Below are positions 54,146-61,639 of a stretch of DNA of 64,000 bases, piece after piece. Positions within the stretch are counted from its first letter, which is position 1, and each line of letters starts with the position of its first letter. The stretch covers positions 151,622-215,621 of the forward strand of contig QPMI01000170.1 of NCBI GenBank assembly GCA_004431415.1. Reading direction: 5' to 3'. A program made the translations under genes and the position numbers. The notes under the pieces are model-generated. The model ran no database searches. It was not told the origin of the DNA and saw only the letters and a program-made list of their open reading frames with translations. The stretch comes from Cyanophora paradoxa CCMP329. Taxonomy: Eukaryota; Plantae; Glaucophyta.

Positions 54146-56125
54146 TCACTCTACGCCGGCGCCGGCTCCGTGCCGCCGGGGGCGGGAGCCGCAGGAGGCT
54201 GCGGGACCGGGGGGGCGGGGGGCGGGGGCGTGAGGAGCGGGGGCCCGGGGCGGGGCGCGGGAGGAGGCCCAGGAGCGGCACGCGTCCTCGCACGCCTGCG
54301 CGGGCGTCACGGGGCACGCCGCGCGCGGGGAGCGCGCTGGCTCTGGGCGTGGGGGCGGGCCTGGGAAAGGGGCGGCGGGGCCGCCAGGCGAGGCCGCCCG
54401 CCTCGAGGGGCGCCGCCGCCGCCGCCACGTCCGCCCAGACGGCCAGCGCGTCCCCCGCCCGCCCCGGCCCGTACCTGCCGCCGGCGCCCTGCTTCGCTGC
54501 GGCGGCAAAGGCCAGGGCCGGCGTGGGGCGGACCGGAGGGGCAGGGGCCGGCCGGCGGTGCGCTCGACGAGGCGGGCGAGGCGGAGGACCGAGCAGGGCT
54601 CCCCCGAGGCCACGTTGAAGGCCCGGAACAGCGCCCCCTGCCCCCGCCCCCGCCCCACTCAGTGAATTGCGCGATCGATGCGTCGGAGGCTGAGGGTGCG
54701 GCCGGAGCGCGGGTTTCGGGCGCTTGCGTGGCGGGGGCGGCGGGCGGCGAGGCGGAGGGCGGCGAGGAAGCTGTCGGCGGCGTCGCAGACGTGGAAGAAG
54801 TCGCGCGCGCCGCCCCGCCCCGCCCCGTGCACCGTCAGCTCCCGCTCCGCCCCCCGCAGCACCTGCAGCACCGCGATCACGCGTACGCAGGAGGGGCCGG
54901 AGCGCTGGCGGGGGCGAGGCGCCGGGGCGCACGCGCTCGATGCGGGGCATGAGGTTGGCGTGCGGGCCGGCGCCGCGCTCGCGCAGGGCCCCGCTCTCGT
55001 GCGCCCCGACGGGGTTGAAGAGACGGAGGGCGACCACGCGCCACGGCCGCCCGGCGCTCGAGCCGGGGCCCCTGCTGCTCCCCGCCGCGACCTGCTCCAG
55101 CATCTCCTCCGCCGCCCGCTTCGAGGCCCCGTAGGGGCACGTCGCTCCCGCCGCCTCCGCCGCCGCCTCCTGCAGCGGCCCCTCCGATCGCGAGCCGTCA
55201 CCGTACACCGTCGCTGCCGGCGCCCGGGCAGAGGTCCGAGAGTCAGCCGGAACCCAATCGCAAGCGCCGGCGCCGCCGGGCCGCGCGATGGGAGCGGAGG
55301 GCTGGGCGGGCGGGCGCACAAGAAGAGGCGAAGACGAGGACGCGGGGCCCGTCGGGGAGGGCCTCGGCTGCGCTCAGCAGCGCCGCCGTGCCCCCCACGT
55401 TCACGTCCCAATACAGCGCCGCGCTCTCCAGCGACTCCGGCACCGACTTGCGCGCCGCGAGGTGGCAGACCGCCCAGGGCCGCGCGGCGGCGAGGGCCCG
55501 GGCGGTGGCGGCGCGGTCGCGGAGGTCGCAGCGGAAGAGGGGCAGCGGGCGCCCGGCGAGGCGGGCGACGGCGCGGAGGGCGGCCGCGCTGCCCGTCGAG
55601 AGGTCGTCGAGCACAGAGACCTGGCGCGAGACCGTCAGTTTCGATTTACATTTGCCGGTCGCGCTTCAAGGCCTGAATGTAGATCTGCAGCTGAAACTTT
55701 CGCACCTGGAAGCCGGCCTCGACGAGAGCAAGGCAAACGTGGGAGCCAATGAAGCCGGCACCGCCTGTCACTGCCCCGCGGCCGTCAGACGTGCTGGTCG
55801 TGATGCAGAGTGCGTGAAAGGTGCTCTAACCGAGCACGCGCGCTCCATGCGGTGGCTCGAGCTCGTCCTCTCCGGATCCTTGCAGTTGCAATTGCAATTG
55901 AAGCTCGTGATCCCGATCGGAAAACGAGAACGGAACGAGAGGCGCGCTGGTCGCGACTGTTGTGTTCGGCGCAAAATCGATAACACGGTCAAGATCTAGA
56001 CCGGCGGCCGCGAAAAGTGGTTCGGAACCTGCGCGAGTTTTGCGCGAAAATCGCAAGGGTGGCCGCAACAAAACTAGACGCACCGCGAAAACGATCGCGC
56101 TGACCGAGAAAGAACTTTTGGTCAT
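54146..56125 (-). CDS. UDP-glucose 4-epimerase-like extended SDR (GalE/UXE-like) with an N-terminal extension
   Basis: RVLV|TGGAGFIGSH, HLAARKSVPES, VFASS|ATVYG, PYGASK, LRLFNPVGAHESG, RDFFHV and FNVASG. The start codon is uncertain. Confidence 0.88.
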
Positions 56126-56994
56126 GCGAGCCGAGCGCAAATACGTATACATGCGCATCCTTTGCTCGGGGGCGGGAATGCTTGATTGCAGGTTCAGAAT
56201 GCAGCTCCGCGACGTGCGCGCGGGGCGTGACGAGAGACAGCGCATGCGCATGCATATGTGCATTGATCAGCGGCGTGCAAAACAGCATTTTAGCGTCGAC
56301 GCCGCGAGCTTCAAATTCAATGTTGGAGCTGTCAGTTAGCTGGGGTTTGGTGGGGTTTAGCTGTCAGTTAACGTTAGCTCGCGAGCTCGCGCTAGCTATA
56401 TAGCTCATGATCAAAATACTATGATACTCGCAGAGCTCGAGCTCGAGGAGCCTCGGAGCCTCTCAGAGTCTCAGAGTCTGTTGCGTGGCCATGGCCATGG
56501 GGAGCTCCGGCTCTCTCGGGTCATGGGGAGCTCGAGGCTCTCTAGATCTAAATCTGCAACTTAGAAGCCCTAGGCCTGGAGTTGGACAATGGCAAGCCAA
56601 ATTTAAAGGCCGGGCCTGCGCGCGGTGTCTGCGGCTCCGAGGCCGGATCCGGGATCCGCATGCGCATGCCGCAGTGCACCGCGACAGTTGCAACTTGGAA
56701 GCCTTCACTGGATTCACGGCCTACAGCTAAGGCTCCTTCAAGGCTCAGCGGCTTCTCGCCCTCAGGGTCAGCTGCAGCCCATAATAATTGAATCGGAATT
56801 GAATCCGGGTCATGAACCAGTTTTGCAACTGCATATGCATCAACTAACTCTGCAGCTGCCGCAGTGCAGTGTGCCAGCCGCGGGCCGGGCCCGGGGCGTG
56901 GGGCGCCTACTAGGCTCATGATCAGGAGGCCCGGCGCGCCGGCGTAAGCCTAGGCCCGGCCTTAGCCTACAGGTAAACCGGCGCCTACACCTGA

Positions 56995-59900
56995 TCACGC
57001 GGCGGCGGGGGGAGGGTCCTGGGGGTCGGGGGCGCGGGGCCGGCGGAGGGTGCAGGTGCGGCAGAGGGGCCGGCTGCGGTAGTCGGCGACGAGGCGGCGG
57101 TAGACGGGGGCGCCCCAGAGGCGCAGGAGGCCCCCGTCCGCCACGTTCCCGAAGTAGCCCAGCCCCGCCCGCTCTGCCCGCCCCGCCCCCGATCAGCCCC
57201 GCACGGCCCAGGGTCATGATCAACCCCCGGCCCGGGTCTCGCTTTGAGGGCCCGGGGAGGGGAGTCTGGGATGCGGAGGCACCGGCGTCGGGGGCGCAGC
57301 AGGGGTCGAAGCGGCCCTCGGCGCTGACCCAGGCCTCGCGCCCGAGGAACGGGCACACGTCCTCCTCGCCCCGCTCCTGCGCGCCGGCCCCCGGCATCGA
57401 CGCAAGCTCAGCGAGGAGCGGGGGGGGGGGGGGGGGGGGGGGGCCGGCACGCGGGGCCGGGCGGGGTCGAGGTCGTCGAAGTTGTCGAGGCGGAGCGGCA
57501 GGCCCGTCGCCCGGTGCCGCGCCCCCGCCGCGAGGGCGCGGCACTCGGCGGCCACCGCGTTCCAGCGCGGCGCCGCCTCCGCGGTCCGCAGCCCCTGCCC
57601 CGCGATCTCCCCGAAGTGCGCCCAGAGGCTGCCGGCGGCAGCGGCGGTCGGCGCGGAGGCGGCGGCGGGGCGGGGTGGCGGGGGGCGCGCTGGTGGCCCT
57701 TGACGCGGTCGACGCCGAGGTCGGCGGCGAGGCGCACCAGCGCCGGCAGCTCCGCCAGGTTCCCCTGCGCCCCGCGCCTCGCATCGCCACCGCCGGCAGC
57801 TGCCCCCCGGCGCAGGCGCGCGTGCGGCCCCGGGCACCTCCATGAAGGTGCACTGCAGCGTCACCGTGCACCTGCCGCCCCGCCCTCGCCCCCCGCCCCC
57901 GGCGCCGGGCCCCGCCCCCCGGCGCACCGCTGCTCGGGGTGCTCCCGCGCGTGCTCGTCCCGCACCCGCAGCAGCGTCCTCAGGTTCTGCGGGCGATGGT
58001 AGTCAGGGCGTGGGCGGAGGCGCAGGCGGGGGGGCGATGGAGGGGGCGGGGGGCCTGGAGCTGGCGCTGGAAACGGGTGCCGTGCATGATCGCCTCCTGC
58101 GTCGCCGCCGTCGCCCCGTTCCAGCTCACCTGCGCGGCCCCGGTGCACGCCGTCGCACGCCGCCCGGCGCCAGGCCATGGGCCCCGGGCGGCCGCGCGGC
58201 GAGCCTTGATATCGGAGGCGACGGGGACGATGTCGCGGGCCCACGCCTCCGCCCCGCGCCCTGCCCCGCACCTCGCCCCGGGCGGAGGGGGAGGGGAGGG
58301 GTGCGGCGGGGCCCCGGGGCCGGGGCGGGCGGGCCTGGGAAGGTGCCGTTTGTGGTGAGGTTGAGCTTGAGGCGGAGGCGGGCGCAGAGGGCGAGGAGGG
58401 CGGGGAAGCCGTCCCACAGCAGCGGCTCGCCCATCGTCGACGGGATCACCTGCCCGCCCGTCCCCGCGCGCTCCCGTGGGCCCCGCTCCACTTCGAAGCG
58501 GGGCGGGGCGGGGGGCGGGGCGGGCGGGGACCTCGCGGAGGCCGCGCCCCGCGCACTCCTCGAGCACCCGCGCCACCTGCCCCGCCCCGGCCTCAGCCCC
58601 GCCTCGGGGAGGGCGGGGGGCGGGCGGGCCATGTGGAAGCTGGCGCGGCGGGGCGGGCGGCCCGAGGCGAGGCGCTCCCGCCACACGTCGCTGTGCGGCG
58701 AGAAGCACTCGCACCTGCCCCCGTCACCTCCACCGCCGCCGGGCCGGGGCCGGGCGGGCGGACGGACATCTCGCAGTGGAGGTTGCAGTCGTCGGGGTTC
58801 GTGTCGAGCGTGACCCGCCACGGGCCCTCCAGCGCCGCCGCCGCCTCGGGGCCCGGGGAGGGGCCCGGGGCAGGGGCCGGGGCGGGGCCCCGGTAGAGCT
58901 GGAGGAGCTCCCGCACGTGCTCCGCGAGGGGCACGGCCCCGCCGTCCGCCGAGTGGAGGTAGCCCCGCGCCCCGAGCGCCGCCAGCCCGTCCCGCCCCAG
59001 GTCGATCGCCCGCTGCCGCCCCGGCCGCCGTCAGAGCCTCGCGGGGGGCGGGCGTGGGGGGCGAGGGAGGCGCCTGGAGGGCGGTGGCGAGGCCGGCCTC
59101 GTCGCGGAAGGGGGCGAGGAGCCCGTTCACGCCCTCCGCCACCTGCTCCGCCATCCCGCCCCTGCGCCCCCGCTCCCGCACTCGGCCAGCGGGGCGCGCG
59201 AGGCGGGGCGGGGCGGGCGGGCCGGTCGAAGGTGATGACCGGGCGGCGGGCGTGGAGGGCCTGAAAGAAAACGAGCGCTGTCGGCGCCCGCGCGAGAGGC
59301 GCCCCGGCGCGGGAGGGGAGGCCGGCGCCCCCGCCCCCCGTCTACCGCCCGCCTGGCAAGCGCCTCCGCCGCGGCGGCGAGGGGCGTGGAGAGGGCCGCC
59401 GGGGCGCGCACCTCGTGGATGACGAGCGGGGAGCACTCGTCCCACACGGAGGGGACGACGAGGGCGTCGCAGCCGGCGAGCACGCGCTCCGCCACCGCCT
59501 CGTTCCCGCACTCCCCCATCACCTCCACGCGCCCGCCCGCTCCCCGGCACCTGCCCGCCCCGTCGGGGCGGCGCGAGGGCGGCGAAGGGCGGCGGGGCGG
59601 GGCCTGGGCGGGGTCGGCGAGGGCGCGGCGGAGGGCGGCGAGGAGGGCGGGGTCGCCGGCGCCCCAGATGCGGAGGCGGGCGTCGCCGCGGGTGCGCCCG
59701 AAGGCGCGCAGCAGGCGGTCCAGGCCCTTGCTCGGGTGCAGGCGCCCCAGGAAGGCGAGCTCCACGGGGCCGGCGCCGGCCTCGCGCGGCGGCGGCGGCG
59801 GCGGGAGGTCGAAGCCGTAGTCGAGGACGGCGAGGCGGCCCGGCGGGGCGAGGAGGGCGGCGAAGCGCGCGTCGGAGCGGAAGCGCGCGGCGAGGCTCGC

Positions 59901-61190
59901 GGCCGGCGCCACGAAGCAGTCCACGTGCCGGCACGCCTCCAGCACCGCCGCCATCCGCGCCCCCACCTGGGCCCTCTCTGAGCCGCGCCGCGCCCGGAGC
60001 GGGGTGGGGCTGGGCCGGGGCGGACCCAGCGCGTCCAGTAGGCGGCGTCGGCCTCGGCCTCGGCGGGGAGGCCCGTGGCGAGGCGGTTGAAGCAGTCCGC
60101 CGCGCACCGCTCGTCCCGCTGCCCCTCGCACGCCGCCCACGGCTCCCCCGCCGTCAGCCCGCTCTTCAGGAACTGGCCCCGCGGGCACATCAGCCTGCGC
60201 GCCGCCCGTGAGCTCGCGCCGGGGCTGCGGTGGGCGGGCGGAGCGGGCGGGGGGGCGGGCCAGAAGTCGTGGAGGGTGAAGAGGACGCGGGCGCCGCGGG
60301 CCTTGGCGACGGCGGGGAGGCCCACGCTGAGGTGGTTCAGGTGCCTGCGCGCCCCGCGCGCCGGCGTCTGAGGGCGCCAGCGAGCTCGGGCTCGAGGCGC
60401 GCACCCGAAGTGGACCACGTCGGGCTTGAACTCGGCGCAGACCTGCGCGCGCGCCGGCCGGCCCGAGCGCGCTCGGGCGGGCGGGTCGAGGCGGGGGCGG
60501 GGCGGGGGCGGGCGCGGACTGCGTCAAAGGCGGCGTCGATGGCGGCGTCGGCGAAGGCGGCGTTGGAGCGTGCGTGGTTGACGAGGCGCACGGCGACGCG
60601 CCCGTCGCGCGCGTCCCGCCCCGCCCGCACGCCGTAGTCCGGCGCGGTCGGGTCCTCCTCGCGCGCGAAGACGAGGACGTCGTGGCCGGCGTCGGCCAGG
60701 CCCCGCCCCAGCGTCTGCGTGTAGATCTCGCTCCCCGCGCTGTACAGCGGCGGGTACCTGCGCCGCCCGCGTTCAGGTCCGGGAGCGACAGAGGCTCGGG
60801 GACGGACCCGTAGTTCACGAGAAGGATCCTCATGCGCTCCGATGGGGCGGGCGAGGGCGCGCCGGCGTCCGCATGCGAAGTACTTGTGGCGGAGACGACC
60901 CGATCATGATCGATATCAGGGAACGCGGCCGGCGGAGCAGGAGCGGAACGGCGGGAGAACAGCCGATGCTCGCTGCCGGTGAAGAAGAGCTTCGCGGACG
61001 CGCGGGAGCAAGGCCGGCCTGCGCATGCCGCGGCCGCGGTCGACGTCGCGGACCGCCGAGAGCTCGAGCACCTCGAGCGCGCGCATGCGGACGCCCCATC
61101 GAAAGAGGCGCGCGGAGACGAACGGCAGCCTAGGCCTTCGAATGCGACAGGGGCGCTGCCGAGAGCAGGCACGAAGAGCGGAGAGGGCAT
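56995..61190 (-). CDS. Fusion of a GT4 (GT-B) glycosyltransferase and a radical SAM/SPASM-like enzyme, with a putative plastid presequence
   Basis: GT4 part: MRILLVNYG|YPPLYSAGSEIYT, KPDVVHFG|H, TLHDFW|LMCPRG, FLGRLHPSKG, VVPSVWDECSPLVIHE|A, GGMAEQV. It continues in frame into DTNPDDCNLHCEMC (CxxxCxxC), STMGEPL, LTTNG and the C-terminal CPFL...FDPCC...FGNV...CRTC. Stop at 56995-97. Confidence 0.9.
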
Positions 61191-61639
61191 ATCCTGTAGC
61201 GGTGGAAGGATGTCAACGAGCGATACAAACGCACAATGTAGAACTCACTCTGGAAAACTTGCACCTTGCAATTGTGGAAAACCGCAACTGACGGAAAGCC
61301 GCAACTGACGGACTTCCGATCGCGATCGCTGCATGCACCTGTACGCCCCAGTTGGGCCGAAAATTGGGCCGAAAGTACGGCTCCGGTCGCGATCGAGTCC
61401 GCGATGGCAGTACCGGTACCGCAATTGATGATGAGCGCCACTGCTGCGGCTATCCATATGTGCGCAGTGCAGCTGCTGATCATGAGCTGCAGCTGCAGCA
61501 CAGAGCCCTCCGAAGTTTAAGGAGAGGATGCGCGTATACTTGAAAGCAGAGATCCAGAGCAATTGCGATGTAACCCTCGGCCTCATTTCTCACTTCCACT
61601 GATCATGAGCCCAGGGCCGGGCCCCGTTGCAAGTACTAG

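What the first reader, a model, noticed from the sequence alone, without database searches (positions are those of the whole stretch)
56995..61190. Intron-rich eukaryotic GT4 glycosyltransferase-radical SAM/SPASM fusion with a plastid-like transit peptide
Seen in the sequence: once spliced, a complete GT-B glycosyltransferase runs in frame, through a short Pro/Ala linker (about 58820-58895), into a radical SAM domain. Its CNLHCEMC motif is split by intron 58715-58767, and a Cys-rich CPFL..PCC..CRTC auxiliary-cluster-type tail follows. The GT part has its own four-Cys insert (CPRG...C...C...C). A roughly 119-aa Ser/Ala/Arg-rich extension beginning MPSPLFVPA precedes the point where the bacterial-type protein would start (MRILLV, 60833). 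Established: both domain types are typical of bacterial envelope-glycan loci, and radical SAM enzymes need Fe-S clusters, SAM and a reductant. Inference: this is a horizontally acquired, intronised, organelle-targeted enzyme that transfers a sugar and then modifies it by radical chemistry. I know of no characterised eukaryotic pathway like this.
Basis: partly seen in the sequence, partly recalled or inferred. Interest (0 to 1): 0.82.

Follow-up and report, generated by a model that had tools for sequence, protein, structure and literature searches.

The report
Bacterial sugar-transferase/radical-SAM fusion gene in an alga
The alga (almost certainly the glaucophyte Cyanophora paradoxa) carries an intact, 20-intron copy of a two-domain bacterial enzyme (sugar transferase joined to a radical-SAM iron-sulfur domain) that is widespread and highly conserved in bacteria but has never been characterised, so the gene is real and of bacterial origin, but the fusion itself is not a eukaryotic invention.

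Summary
On the minus strand, 61190-56995, a homology-guided model of 21 exons and 20 introns (11 GT-AG, 9 GC-AG) closes into 927 codons with no in-frame stop. A profile of 48 bacterial 783-aa proteins maps colinearly (positions 10-779) onto it. One exon (59012-58768) holds the end of the GT domain, the linker and the start of the radical SAM domain, so the fusion is physical.

The fusion is not new. About 575 loci in bacterial species genomes encode it at about 70% identity, and split versions also exist. It sits in a compact cassette, not in envelope-glycan loci. The cassette holds an SDR sugar-nucleotide epimerase/dehydratase, GT4, rSAM/SPASM, a histidine-phosphatase-like protein, and a WG-repeat protein with or without an O-methyltransferase. 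No curated family names it and I found no paper on it.

The public model (EukProt tig00000718_g3754.t1) mis-splices two places.

Plastid (muroplast) targeting is plausible, with Phe at residue 6 of a 119-aa Ser/Ala/Arg-rich extension. The 5' end remains unresolved.

No donor lineage could be named, and no other eukaryotic copy was seen.

The parts
56995..61190 (-). Whole coding region of the GT4-radical SAM/SPASM gene: 21 exons and 20 introns, 927 codons plus TGA (943 if intron 6 is retained)
60834..61190 (-). N-terminal extension of 119 codons ahead of the residue that aligns with the bacterial start (MRILLV, ATG 60833). Composition: Ser 22, Ala 24, Arg 13, Pro 13; Phe at residue 6; first acidic residue at 18. 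It is a candidate muroplast transit peptide, but its translation is not shown.
   Evidence: Criterion from PMC4510345. The public model instead starts at 61086 in another frame, with an intron 61053-60990.
60520..60757 (-). Exon 2: start of the GT-B N-terminal (Glyco_transf_4) domain, profile positions 10-93
   Evidence: 65.8 bits, E 3e-22; PF13439, E 5e-5 on the raw frame
60092..60187 (-). Four-Cys insert in the GT N-domain (C-P-R-G ... C ... C ... C) within exon 5 (60194-60026). All four Cys are invariant in the bacterial family.
   Evidence: 53 bits; C131, C151, C159, C163 invariant
59412..59966 (-). Exons 6 and 7 (59966-59599, 59550-59412): GT-B C-terminal (Glycos_transf_1) domain with the E-x7-E motif (W-D-E-C-S-P-L-V-I-H-E). 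Intron 6 (59598-59551, GC-AG, 48 nt) is ambiguous and may be read through.
   Evidence: 93.6 bits, E 1e-30; PF00534 E 1.5e-4
59074..59260 (-). Exons 8 (59260-59223) and 9 (59161-59074), encoding the conserved P-V-I-T-x-D-x-G-G-M-A-E...N-G-L-L donor-binding stretch. The public model misses both.
   Evidence: (profile 358-388)
58768..59012 (-). Exon 10: a single exon carrying the last GT helix, the Pro/Ala-rich linker (about 58895-58820), G-P-W-R-V-T and the first two Cys of CxxxCxxC. This is physical proof of the fusion.
   Evidence: profile 398-463, 41.5 bits
58711..58787 (-). Radical SAM cluster motif C-N-L-H-C-E-M-C (Cys codons 58787-85, 58775-73, 58713-11), interrupted by intron 10 (58767-58715, GT-AG, 53 nt) inside the Met codon
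   Evidence: C456, C460, C463 invariant
57451..58714 (-). Exons 11-19 of the radical SAM barrel: 58714-58630, 58576-58532, 58449-58335, 58260-58205, 58129-58055, 57986-57928, 57871-57838, 57764-57691, 57628-57451. They include I-P-S-T-M-G-E-P-L-L (SAM-binding GGE-like stretch) and N-L-T-T-N-G.
56995..57376 (-). Exons 20 (57376-57283) and 21 (57173-56995): SPASM-type Cys-rich tail. Cys codons at 57355-53, 57301-296 (CC), 57063-61 and 57054-52 (CxxC). Stop at 56997-56995.
   Evidence: 43.0 and 31.4 bits; PF13186 on exon 21, 17.9 bits; 27.1 bits on P0001
61276..61312 (.). 17-bp tandem repeat (2.2 copies) in the GC-poorer 5' flank, about 90-120 nt upstream of ATG 61190. Possible promoter or 5'-UTR element; function unknown.

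Best explanation
This is a nuclear gene of a glaucophyte alga, almost certainly Cyanophora paradoxa. It descends from a bacterial gene that already encoded a GT4 glycosyltransferase fused to a radical SAM/SPASM enzyme. After transfer it gained about 20 short spliceosomal introns and an N-terminal extension, and it kept every residue that is invariant in the bacterial family. It is therefore most likely a working bifunctional enzyme.

Proposed mechanism (inferred):
- The retaining GT-B half uses a nucleotide sugar to glycosylate a small, probably phosphorylated, acceptor.
- The radical SAM half reductively cleaves SAM at its CxxxCxxC [4Fe-4S] cluster and abstracts a hydrogen from that glycoside. 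The outcome could be a rearrangement, oxidation, epimerisation or C-C bond change, with the Cys-rich tail holding auxiliary cluster(s).
- In bacteria the neighbouring genes supply the modified nucleotide sugar (SDR), remove the phosphate (histidine-phosphatase-like protein) and often O-methylate the product.

In the alga the enzyme is probably imported into the muroplast, where ferredoxin and Fe-S assembly are available. This last point is the weakest.
For: Gene and fusion (shown):
- Colinear match of the 783-position bacterial profile over 17 exon pieces.
- A closed 21-exon model with canonical GT/GC-AG introns.
- GT end, linker and rSAM start all in one exon (59012-58768).
- Full-length 45% identity to the bacterial fusion P0060.

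Organism (shown):
- The window's own model is EukProt tig00000718_g3754.t1.
- That ID format, the GC content and the intron density and length match the Cyanophora paradoxa assembly paper (PMC6704402).

Bacterial origin (shown):
- 55, 1673 and 2246 relatives. The listed hits (55, 120 and 120) are all bacterial or from metagenomes, apart from the window's own model.
- About 575 loci in bacterial species genomes spanning Myxococcota, Pseudomonadota, Planctomycetota, Latescibacterota, Nitrospinota and Gemmatimonadota, plus Cyanobacteria (Hormoscilla).

Constraint (shown):
- All invariant columns of alignments A1 and A2 include the algal sequence. Among them are the four GT Cys, CxxxCxxC and seven later Cys.

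Mechanism (inferred):
- Conserved operon of SDR, GT4-rSAM, WG-repeat+O-methyltransferase and a 250-aa protein.
- The 250-aa protein carries the R-H...R...H signature and matches PhoE-type histidine phosphatases (weak His_Phos_1).
- The GT profile's best solved relatives are 6kih (Tll1590, which I recall is a sucrose-phosphate synthase), MshA, BshA and GlgM. All are GT4 enzymes with small, mostly phosphorylated or acidic acceptors.
- An AlphaFold model of the bacterial rSAM domain (pLDDT 86.5) matches SPASM/twitch enzymes, including the sugar-nucleoside-modifying BlsE and DesII.
- Precedents for 'glycosylate, then radical SAM remodelling of the sugar': calditol synthase Cds and HpnI/HpnK/HpnJ (PMC13459092).

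Targeting (inferred):
- Phe at residue 6, Ser/Ala/Arg/Pro-rich composition, and ATG 61190 as the first in-frame ATG after a stop.
- The rule of Phe within the first 10 residues of cyanelle transit peptides (PMC4510345).
Against: - No transcript or protein data were available, so none of the 20 splice junctions nor the start codon is confirmed.
- In the N-terminal extension, GC3 is 0.74 against 0.98 in the conserved exons. Over 61130-61011 another frame carries the GC3-like signal, and the public model uses that frame.
- 119 aa is longer than the 11-110 range and the 63-aa median reported for cyanelle transit peptides (PMC4510345).
- The cassette partners (phosphatase, WG/O-methyltransferase) were not found in the window. 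Only a GalE-like SDR lies next door, and it is not specifically related to the operon SDR.
- SPASM enzymes classically act on peptides, so a peptide substrate is not excluded.
- The Cys spacing of the tail does not match the canonical SPASM CX2CX5CX3C pattern.
- The donor lineage is unresolved. The algal branch is very long, and its joins carry long-branch warnings.
Confidence: 0.7

Rival explanations
1. The enzyme is cytosolic or targeted elsewhere. The upstream open frame is then either 5' UTR, a differently spliced leader as in the public model, or a mitochondrial-type presequence, and there is no plastid transit peptide.
For: - GC3 of the extension is only 0.74, and over 61130-61011 another frame has GC 0.9-1.0 at its third position.
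- The public model starts at 61086 in that frame.
- Open frames are common by chance at 65-75% GC.
- At 119 aa the extension exceeds the usual cyanelle transit-peptide length (PMC4510345).
Against: - ATG 61190 is the first in-frame ATG after a stop.
- It follows a GC-poor flank.
- It gives M-P-S-P-L-F-V-P-A, with Phe at residue 6 and no acidic residue before 18. That resembles listed cyanelle precursors such as MESAFLVPAP and MSAFVVPVPS.
- The public model is demonstrably wrong elsewhere in this gene.
Confidence: 0.3
2. The radical SAM/SPASM half is a peptide or protein maturase (as in sactipeptide, streptide or anSME systems) and the GT half glycosylates the same peptide or protein. The product would then be a modified peptide, not a small glycoside.
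For: - The closest folds include SuiB, SkfB, PqqE and anSME.
- The weak best NCBIfam and PDB sequence matches are maturases.
Against: - The conserved cassette is tightly packed (overlapping or 6-bp gaps) and holds an SDR nucleotide-sugar enzyme, a histidine-phosphatase-like protein and an O-methyltransferase. No conserved precursor-peptide gene was seen, although my ORF cut-off was 90 aa.
- BlsE and DesII, which act on sugar nucleosides, match equally well.
- The GT relatives act on small acceptors.
Confidence: 0.1
3. The locus is a decaying or unexpressed relic of a transfer (a pseudogene), or an assembly contaminant from a bacterium.
For: - No expression data were available here.
- The algal sequence is a very long branch with a skewed composition.
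Against: - 21 exons keep frame with no stop, and 20 canonical introns interrupt the bacterial-type ORF, which a contaminant would not have.
- All family-invariant residues are kept.
- GC3 of 0.98 matches host coding style.
- A neighbouring intron-split gene lies on the same contig.
Confidence: 0.05

Closest known systems
Unnamed bacterial GT4-radical SAM/SPASM fusion proteins of about 783 aa (e.g. Polyangium spumosum P0042, Halomonas sp. 25-S5 P0017; annotated only as 'glycosyltransferase' or 'radical SAM protein')
   Same: - Same domain order, same junction and same four-Cys insert.
- Same CxxxCxxC motif and same C-terminal cysteines.
- Colinear over profile positions 10-779, at 45-52% identity.
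   Different: - The algal gene has 20 introns, a 64-119-aa N-terminal extension, a Pro/Ala-richer linker and extreme GC3.
- Its operon partners are not adjacent.
- Bacterial members are about 70% identical to each other, while the algal one is a long branch.
Split bacterial versions: adjacent GT4 (420-440 aa) and rSAM/SPASM (335-365 aa) genes, e.g. Candidatus Dadabacteria L082, L081, L084
   Same: - Same two enzymes at the same identity level (50-55% for the rSAM part).
- Same cassette with an SDR and a phosphatase-like gene.
   Different: - Two genes with overlapping stop and start codons instead of one ORF.
- The algal rSAM domain groups with one split form (P0212) in a quick tree, but that is a join of long branches and cannot be trusted.
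GT4 enzymes with small acceptors: sucrose-phosphate synthase (PDB 6kih; identity from memory), MshA (3c4q, 7qsg), BshA (5d00, 2jjm), GlgM (6tvp)
   Same: - Best sequence-profile matches of the GT half among solved structures.
- The synthase-plus-phosphatase logic of SPS/SPP and MshA/MshA2 parallels the cassette's histidine-phosphatase-like gene.
   Different: - Only the C-terminal donor-binding domain aligns (E 6e-17 at best).
- None has the four-Cys insert or a fused radical SAM domain.
- No NCBIfam equivalog reaches its cut-off.
Radical SAM enzymes that remodel sugars: BlsE, DesII (structures), calditol synthase Cds and HpnJ (genetics)
   Same: - BlsE (7vob) and DesII (8hzv) are among the top fold matches of the rSAM domain.
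- Cds and HpnI/K/J are precedents for glycosylation followed by radical ring chemistry (PMC13459092).
   Different: - Sequence identity is 14-18% only.
- None is fused to a glycosyltransferase.
- HpnJ belongs to another (B12-binding) class.
- This is a resemblance in logic, not a demonstrated relationship.
SPASM/twitch maturases SuiB, SkfB, PqqE, anSME
   Same: - Best overall fold matches (E about 1e-13, TM 0.6-0.65).
- Weak sequence matches (E about 1e-3).
- The Pfam SPASM domain scores above its cut-off.
   Different: - They act on peptides or proteins.
- The Cys spacing of the tail here (C...CC...CxxC) differs from the canonical SPASM motif.
- No precursor peptide gene was seen in the cassette.

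Membership tests
GT4 glycosyltransferases (GT-B fold, retaining; Pfam Glyco_transf_4 + Glycos_transf_1) | N-terminal Glyco_transf_4 domain above Pfam's gathering score | tested here: met
   P0001 (the window's public model): PF13439 at 51.6 bits against a 28.5 cut-off. Window exon 2 alone scores 23.9 bits.
GT4 glycosyltransferases (GT-B fold, retaining; Pfam Glyco_transf_4 + Glycos_transf_1) | C-terminal Glycos_transf_1 domain above the gathering score | tested here: inconclusive
   Single frames and P0001 give 21-22 bits against 26.4, because the domain is split over exons 6-9 and P0001 lacks exons 8-9. Bacterial orthologues score 90-101 bits. The joined exons were not scanned, by instruction.
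GT4 glycosyltransferases (GT-B fold, retaining; Pfam Glyco_transf_4 + Glycos_transf_1) | E-x7-E motif in the donor-binding domain | tested here: met
   Exon 7 encodes E-C-S-P-L-V-I-H-E, aligned to the invariant E337 and E345 of the family.
Radical SAM superfamily | CxxxCxxC motif for the SAM-binding [4Fe-4S] cluster | tested here: met
   C-N-L-H-C-E-M-C at 58787-58711, split by intron 10. It aligns with the invariant C456, C460 and C463.
Radical SAM superfamily | Pfam Radical_SAM domain above the gathering score, or a partial TIM-barrel fold | tested here: inconclusive
   P0001 scores 28.7 bits against 29.5. Bacterial orthologues score 42-53 bits. The AlphaFold model of the orthologous domain (pLDDT 86.5) matches SuiB, BlsE, SkfB, DesII and viperin at E 1e-13 to 1e-9. 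The algal protein itself was not folded.
Radical SAM superfamily | Reductive cleavage of SAM to the 5'-deoxyadenosyl radical | not testable with these tools
   Needs anaerobic reconstitution.
SPASM/twitch subclass | Pfam SPASM domain above the gathering score | tested here: met
   P0001: PF13186 at 27.1 bits against 21.5. Window exon 21 alone scores 17.9 bits.
SPASM/twitch subclass | Seven-Cys pattern (including CX2CX5CX3C) for two auxiliary clusters (motif from my own knowledge) | tested here: inconclusive
   Seven Cys after the core are invariant (A2: C98, C179, C281, C299, C300, C342, C345). Their spacing is C...CC...CxxC, not the canonical run. The number of auxiliary clusters is unknown.
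Bacterial 783-aa GT4-rSAM/SPASM fusion family (unnamed) | Full-length colinear homology, including the inter-domain junction | tested here: met
   Profile positions 10-779 in order. The junction lies in one exon. 45% identity over 828 columns to P0060.
Bacterial 783-aa GT4-rSAM/SPASM fusion family (unnamed) | Genomic association with the SDR, histidine-phosphatase-like and WG-repeat/O-methyltransferase genes | tested here: not met
   Profiles of the partners find nothing convincing in the 64-kb window. The adjacent SDR (55774-54515) is GalE-like. The rest of the algal genome could not be searched, and operons are not expected to survive in a eukaryote.
Nucleus-encoded muroplast (cyanelle) proteins of glaucophytes | N-terminal extension relative to bacterial orthologues, Ser/Ala-rich, with Phe within the first 10 residues (PMC4510345) | tested here: inconclusive
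   With ATG 61190 the extension is 119 aa, with Phe at residue 6, Ser+Ala 46 of 119, and the first acidic residue at 18. The frame signal is weak, and the public model uses another start with Phe at 13/14.
Nucleus-encoded muroplast (cyanelle) proteins of glaucophytes | Import, or detection in purified muroplasts | not testable with these tools
   Needs proteomics or an import assay.

The most novel reading that the evidence does not exclude
The cassette built around this GT4-radical SAM enzyme makes a still unknown, radical-tailored (for example ring-contracted, C-branched or epimerised) and often O-methylated small glycoside. That cassette is present in hundreds of bacterial species across at least seven phyla. 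A glaucophyte would then have captured its core enzyme and sent it into its peptidoglycan-walled plastid. This would be the first eukaryotic, organelle-located pathway of this chemistry.
Probability: 0.2. Interest if true: 0.75.

Novelty: new member of a known kind. Interest (0 to 1): 0.5.

Why it matters
It pairs two things. The first is a very widespread, strongly conserved bacterial enzyme family (about 70% identity across phyla) that is fused or operon-coupled and has no assigned product. The second is a clean case of its capture and intronisation by an early-branching alga.

For radical SAM enzymology, the cassette (SDR, GT4, rSAM/SPASM, histidine-phosphatase-like, WG/O-methyltransferase) is a well-defined target for finding a new sugar-modifying radical reaction.

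For algal biology, it adds a bacterial-derived Fe-S enzyme that may work in the muroplast. It also shows that the public gene model loses two catalytic stretches, which matters for anyone using that proteome.

It does not overturn anything. Bacterial-derived, intron-rich genes are already known to be common in Cyanophora (PMC6704402).

Tried and rejected
From then on I worked only with coordinates, references and stored ids.
- tblastn of P0001 against the window was swamped by low-complexity hits. I replaced it with exact-match mapping and a profile search of the three frames.
- NCBIfam has no family that reaches its cut-off for either the algal or the bacterial proteins.
- Profiles of the operon partners do not hit the window, apart from a generic SDR match. 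Co-transfer of an operon fragment is therefore not supported, and the neighbouring SDR is GalE-like.
- Donor lineage:
  - The full-length tree puts the algal sequence on a 4.5-substitution branch next to another long branch.
  - The rSAM-only tree joins it to a split-type bacterial protein, with a long-branch warning.
  - Neither tree is trusted. A cyanobacterial (endosymbiont) origin is neither supported nor excluded.
- Intron hairpins: all eight tested introns fold end to end, but only two beat dinucleotide shuffles. A general structural rule is not supported.
- Literature: no paper links Cyanophora to this enzyme or describes the fusion.
- Not done, by instruction: the spliced exons were never joined into one protein for any search, scan or fold. 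Exons were examined by reference, and the stored public model P0001 stood in for the whole protein.
- Not done: the exhaustive representative search. Its output carries no source names, so it could not tell eukaryotic from bacterial relatives.
- tRNA and Rfam scans of the window were empty.

Full report
**1. What is in the sequence**

I read 56800-61400 on the minus strand. The region is 70-81% G+C. That leaves long open frames in all three phases, so open frames alone prove little. Pfam on the raw stop-free frames gave only sub-threshold fragments:
- Glyco_transf_4 at E 5e-5 and 0.019
- Glycos_transf_1 at E 1.5e-4
- SPASM at E 0.004

This is what a domain chopped by introns should give.

**2. 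Relatives**

I ran a word search with the stop-free frame window:59130-61244:-, restricted to the part that holds the C-terminal GT domain. It returned two things:
- The window's own public model, P0001 = EukProt tig00000718_g3754.t1 (899 aa).
- 54 proteins, nearly all about 780 aa, at 35-41% identity that carry Glyco_transf_4, Glycos_transf_1, Radical_SAM and SPASM in that order. Those with an organism name are bacterial (Kofleriaceae, Halomonas, Polyangium); most come from metagenomes.

Some (1062-1098 aa) add an N-terminal NAD-dependent epimerase/dehydratase domain. The fusion therefore pre-exists in bacteria.

**3. Exon model**

A profile of 48 such bacterial proteins (783 positions) was searched against the three minus-strand frames. 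It matches in strict order from position 10 to 779 in 17 pieces, between 60756 and 57034.

Using those anchors, and requiring GT/GC...AG introns and frame continuity, I derived 21 exons and 20 introns. A script checked them:
- 11 GT-AG and 9 GC-AG introns
- all acceptors CAG
- intron lengths 48-151 nt
- 2784 nt = 927 codons plus TGA at 56997-56995
- no internal stop

Exon 10 (59012-58768) contains the last GT helix, the Pro/Ala linker and the start of the radical SAM domain. The two halves are therefore one ORF at the DNA level and not a gene-model join.

By instruction I never joined the exons into one protein for a search, a scan or a fold. Exons were handled by reference, and the stored model P0001 was used where a whole protein was needed.

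**4. The public model is imperfect**

Exact mapping of P0001 and its alignment to the bacterial P0060 show three problems:
- It reads through 59411-59346 and then uses a wrong-frame exon at 59277-59182. This loses the P-V-I-T..G-G-M-A-E..N-G-L-L stretch.
- It reads through 58204-58130. This loses S-W-N-G-A-T..E-A-I-M.
- It starts at 61086 in another frame, with an intron at 61053-60990.

On P0001, Pfam gives the following:

| Domain | Score (bits) | Cut-off (bits) |
|---|---|---|
| Glyco_transf_4 | 51.6 | 28.5 |
| SPASM | 27.1 | 21.5 |
| Radical_SAM | 28.7 | 29.5 |
| Glycos_transf_1 | 21.2 | 26.4 |

The last score is low because of the lost exons.

**5. Organism**

The ID format tigNNN_gNNN is the one used for Cyanophora paradoxa in the improved-assembly paper (PMC6704402). 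Contig names of that form also appear in a Cyanophora expression preprint. That paper reports a genome G+C of 67.6% and 9.2 introns per gene with a mean length of 86 bp. The window's composition and its 48-151-nt introns fit those figures. I take the organism to be C. paradoxa. The paper does not mention this gene.

**6. The bacterial family**

They span Myxococcota, Alpha-, Beta- and Gammaproteobacteria, Planctomycetota, Latescibacterota, Nitrospinota, Gemmatimonadota and Thermodesulfobacteriota. Hormoscilla (Cyanobacteria), Phycisphaerales and Spartobacteria members appear.
- *Conservation.* Members are about 70% identical to each other, and 46% to the algal protein.
- *Naming.* No NCBIfam model reaches its cut-off. 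Sources call them only 'glycosyltransferase' or 'radical SAM protein'.
- *Split forms.* Searching the rSAM half alone, as the operators advised, found many stand-alone rSAM/SPASM proteins of 335-365 aa at the same identity. In three contigs I inspected, these follow a separate GT4 gene of 420-440 aa with overlapping or near-adjacent stop and start codons. Fused and split forms are interleaved in a domain tree.

**7. Neighbourhood**

I clustered the ORFs of the 80 fetched loci. In the 66 loci where the target ORF was recovered, this showed a tight same-strand cassette:
- an SDR epimerase/dehydratase upstream, in 37 loci
- the GT4-rSAM gene
- a protein of about 568 aa with WG repeats and a Methyltransf_2 O-methyltransferase domain, in 52 loci
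- a protein of about 250 aa, in 44 loci

A PhyH dioxygenase or a carbamoyltransferase occurs occasionally.

The 250-aa protein has invariant R-H, R and H residues. Its profile matches PhoE-type histidine phosphatases (E 1.7e-6), and a precomputed weak His_Phos_1 hit agrees. In a Candidatus Dadabacteria contig the WG-repeat protein stands alone without the methyltransferase.

The flanks outside the cassette vary. This is not an envelope-glycan locus.

**8. What the halves resemble**

*GT half.* The GT profile's best solved relatives are Tll1590 (6kih; from memory a cyanobacterial sucrose-phosphate synthase), MshA, BshA, GlgM and PimB'. These are GT4 enzymes with small, often phosphorylated acceptors.

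*rSAM half.* By sequence it has only marginal hits to solved structures: anSME and PqqE at E about 1e-3. An AlphaFold model of the bacterial domain (pLDDT 86.5, pTM 0.86) matches the following:
- SuiB, BlsE, SkfB, DesII, PqqE
- viperin and anSME

It is therefore a SPASM/twitch-type radical SAM barrel. Two of its near neighbours, BlsE and DesII, act on sugar nucleosides.

*Cysteines.* Seven Cys after the core are invariant. Their spacing is not the canonical SPASM run, so the number of auxiliary clusters is open. The four-Cys insert in the GT N-domain is invariant too. It may be a metal or Fe-S site, but I could not test that.

**9. Mechanism proposed**

Shown: the gene, the fusion, its bacterial kinship, the conservation of catalytic motifs, and the cassette.

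Inferred:
- The GT half glycosylates a small phosphorylated acceptor with a nucleotide sugar that the SDR may first modify.
- The rSAM half then abstracts a hydrogen from the glycoside to drive a rearrangement, oxidation or epimerisation.
- The phosphatase and the methyltransferase finish the product.

The synthase-plus-phosphatase pairing is an analogy from my own knowledge (SPS/SPP, MshA/MshA2). The 'glycosylate, then radical remodelling' precedent (calditol synthase, HpnI/K/J) is taken from PMC13459092. A peptide substrate is the main rival.

**10. Targeting**

With ATG 61190 the protein begins M-P-S-P-L-F-V-P-A. Its features are as follows:
- Phe at residue 6
- 46 Ser+Ala, 13 Arg and 13 Pro in 119 residues
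- first acidic residue at 18
- an in-frame stop 19 codons upstream

Köhler et al. (PMC4510345) report the following for cyanelle transit peptides:
- Phe within the first 10 residues in most of them
- examples such as MESAFLVPAP and MSAFVVPVPS
- a median length of 63 aa
- a detection range of 11-110

The N-terminus fits, but 119 aa is long.

Against it, GC3 is 0.74 versus 0.98 in the conserved exons. Between 61130 and 61011 a different frame carries the third-position GC signal, and the public model uses that frame. The 5' end therefore needs transcript data. An extension of at least 64 aa exists under either model, unless translation starts at 60833.

**11. Origin**

Only bacterial or metagenomic relatives were listed, and no second eukaryotic entry appeared. 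The listings are limited in two ways: they show only the best 120 hits, and they are subject to the length and word filters. Short transcriptome fragments from other glaucophytes could therefore have been missed.

Trees cannot name a donor. The algal branch is very long, its composition deviates, and both of its joins carry long-branch warnings. Horizontal transfer from an unidentified bacterium is the simplest reading. Descent from the plastid ancestor is not excluded, since a cyanobacterial member exists.

**12. Verdict**

- The gene is real, fused, intronised and of bacterial origin.
- Targeting is plausible but unproven.
- The fusion is a widespread, uncharacterised bacterial architecture rather than something new in eukaryotes.

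I rate it a new member of a known kind, of moderate interest. Its value lies mainly in the untouched chemistry of the bacterial cassette.

Noticed in passing
window 54515-55774, minus strand: An intron-split SDR gene lies about 1.2 kb downstream of the GT-rSAM stop, on the same strand. Its exons match UDP-glucose 4-epimerase (GalE) best (NCBIfam 36.3 bits for one 71-aa exon; PDB GalE hits). They match the bacterial cassette's SDR only weakly (17 bits). A nucleotide-sugar enzyme next to the glycosyltransferase could be a functional pairing or a coincidence.
   Followed up: partly
window 56995-61190, the 20 introns listed: Nine of 20 introns use GC-AG. Most introns are C-rich in the 5' half and G-rich in the 3' half, and they fold end to end. 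Only two of eight tested are more stable than dinucleotide shuffles: 58531-58450 (z -5.1) and 57450-57377 (z -3.4). The latter contains a run of about 24 C.
   Followed up: partly
window 61276-61312: A 17-bp unit repeated 2.2 times sits in the GC-poorer 5' flank (0.48-0.58 G+C), 90-120 nt upstream of ATG 61190. It may be a promoter or 5'-UTR element.
   Followed up: no
window 59182-59411 and 58130-58204 (public model P0001): The public EukProt model of this gene retains intron sequence, uses a wrong-frame exon and skips two conserved exons. Its Glycos_transf_1 domain therefore falls below Pfam's threshold, and part of the radical SAM barrel is replaced by junk.
   Followed up: yes
L001-L084 (bacterial loci), e.g. 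L051:9066-14714, L082:5746-10552: A compact cassette is conserved across at least seven bacterial phyla and has no assigned product. It holds an SDR, GT4 and rSAM/SPASM (fused or split), a histidine-phosphatase-like protein and a WG-repeat protein with or without an O-methyltransferase. Some proteins fuse the SDR as well (P0012, P0047, P0054; 1062-1098 aa).
   Followed up: partly
L001 and L014 (Polyangium jinanense): One genome carries two copies of the fusion gene, on different scaffolds, at 91% and 74% identity to the Polyangium spumosum query.
   Followed up: no
window 1-64000: No tRNA gene and no Rfam family at gathering score was found anywhere in the window. G+C swings between 0.58 and 0.83 in 2-kb steps, and the GC-richest blocks look like exon-dense regions.
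   Followed up: no
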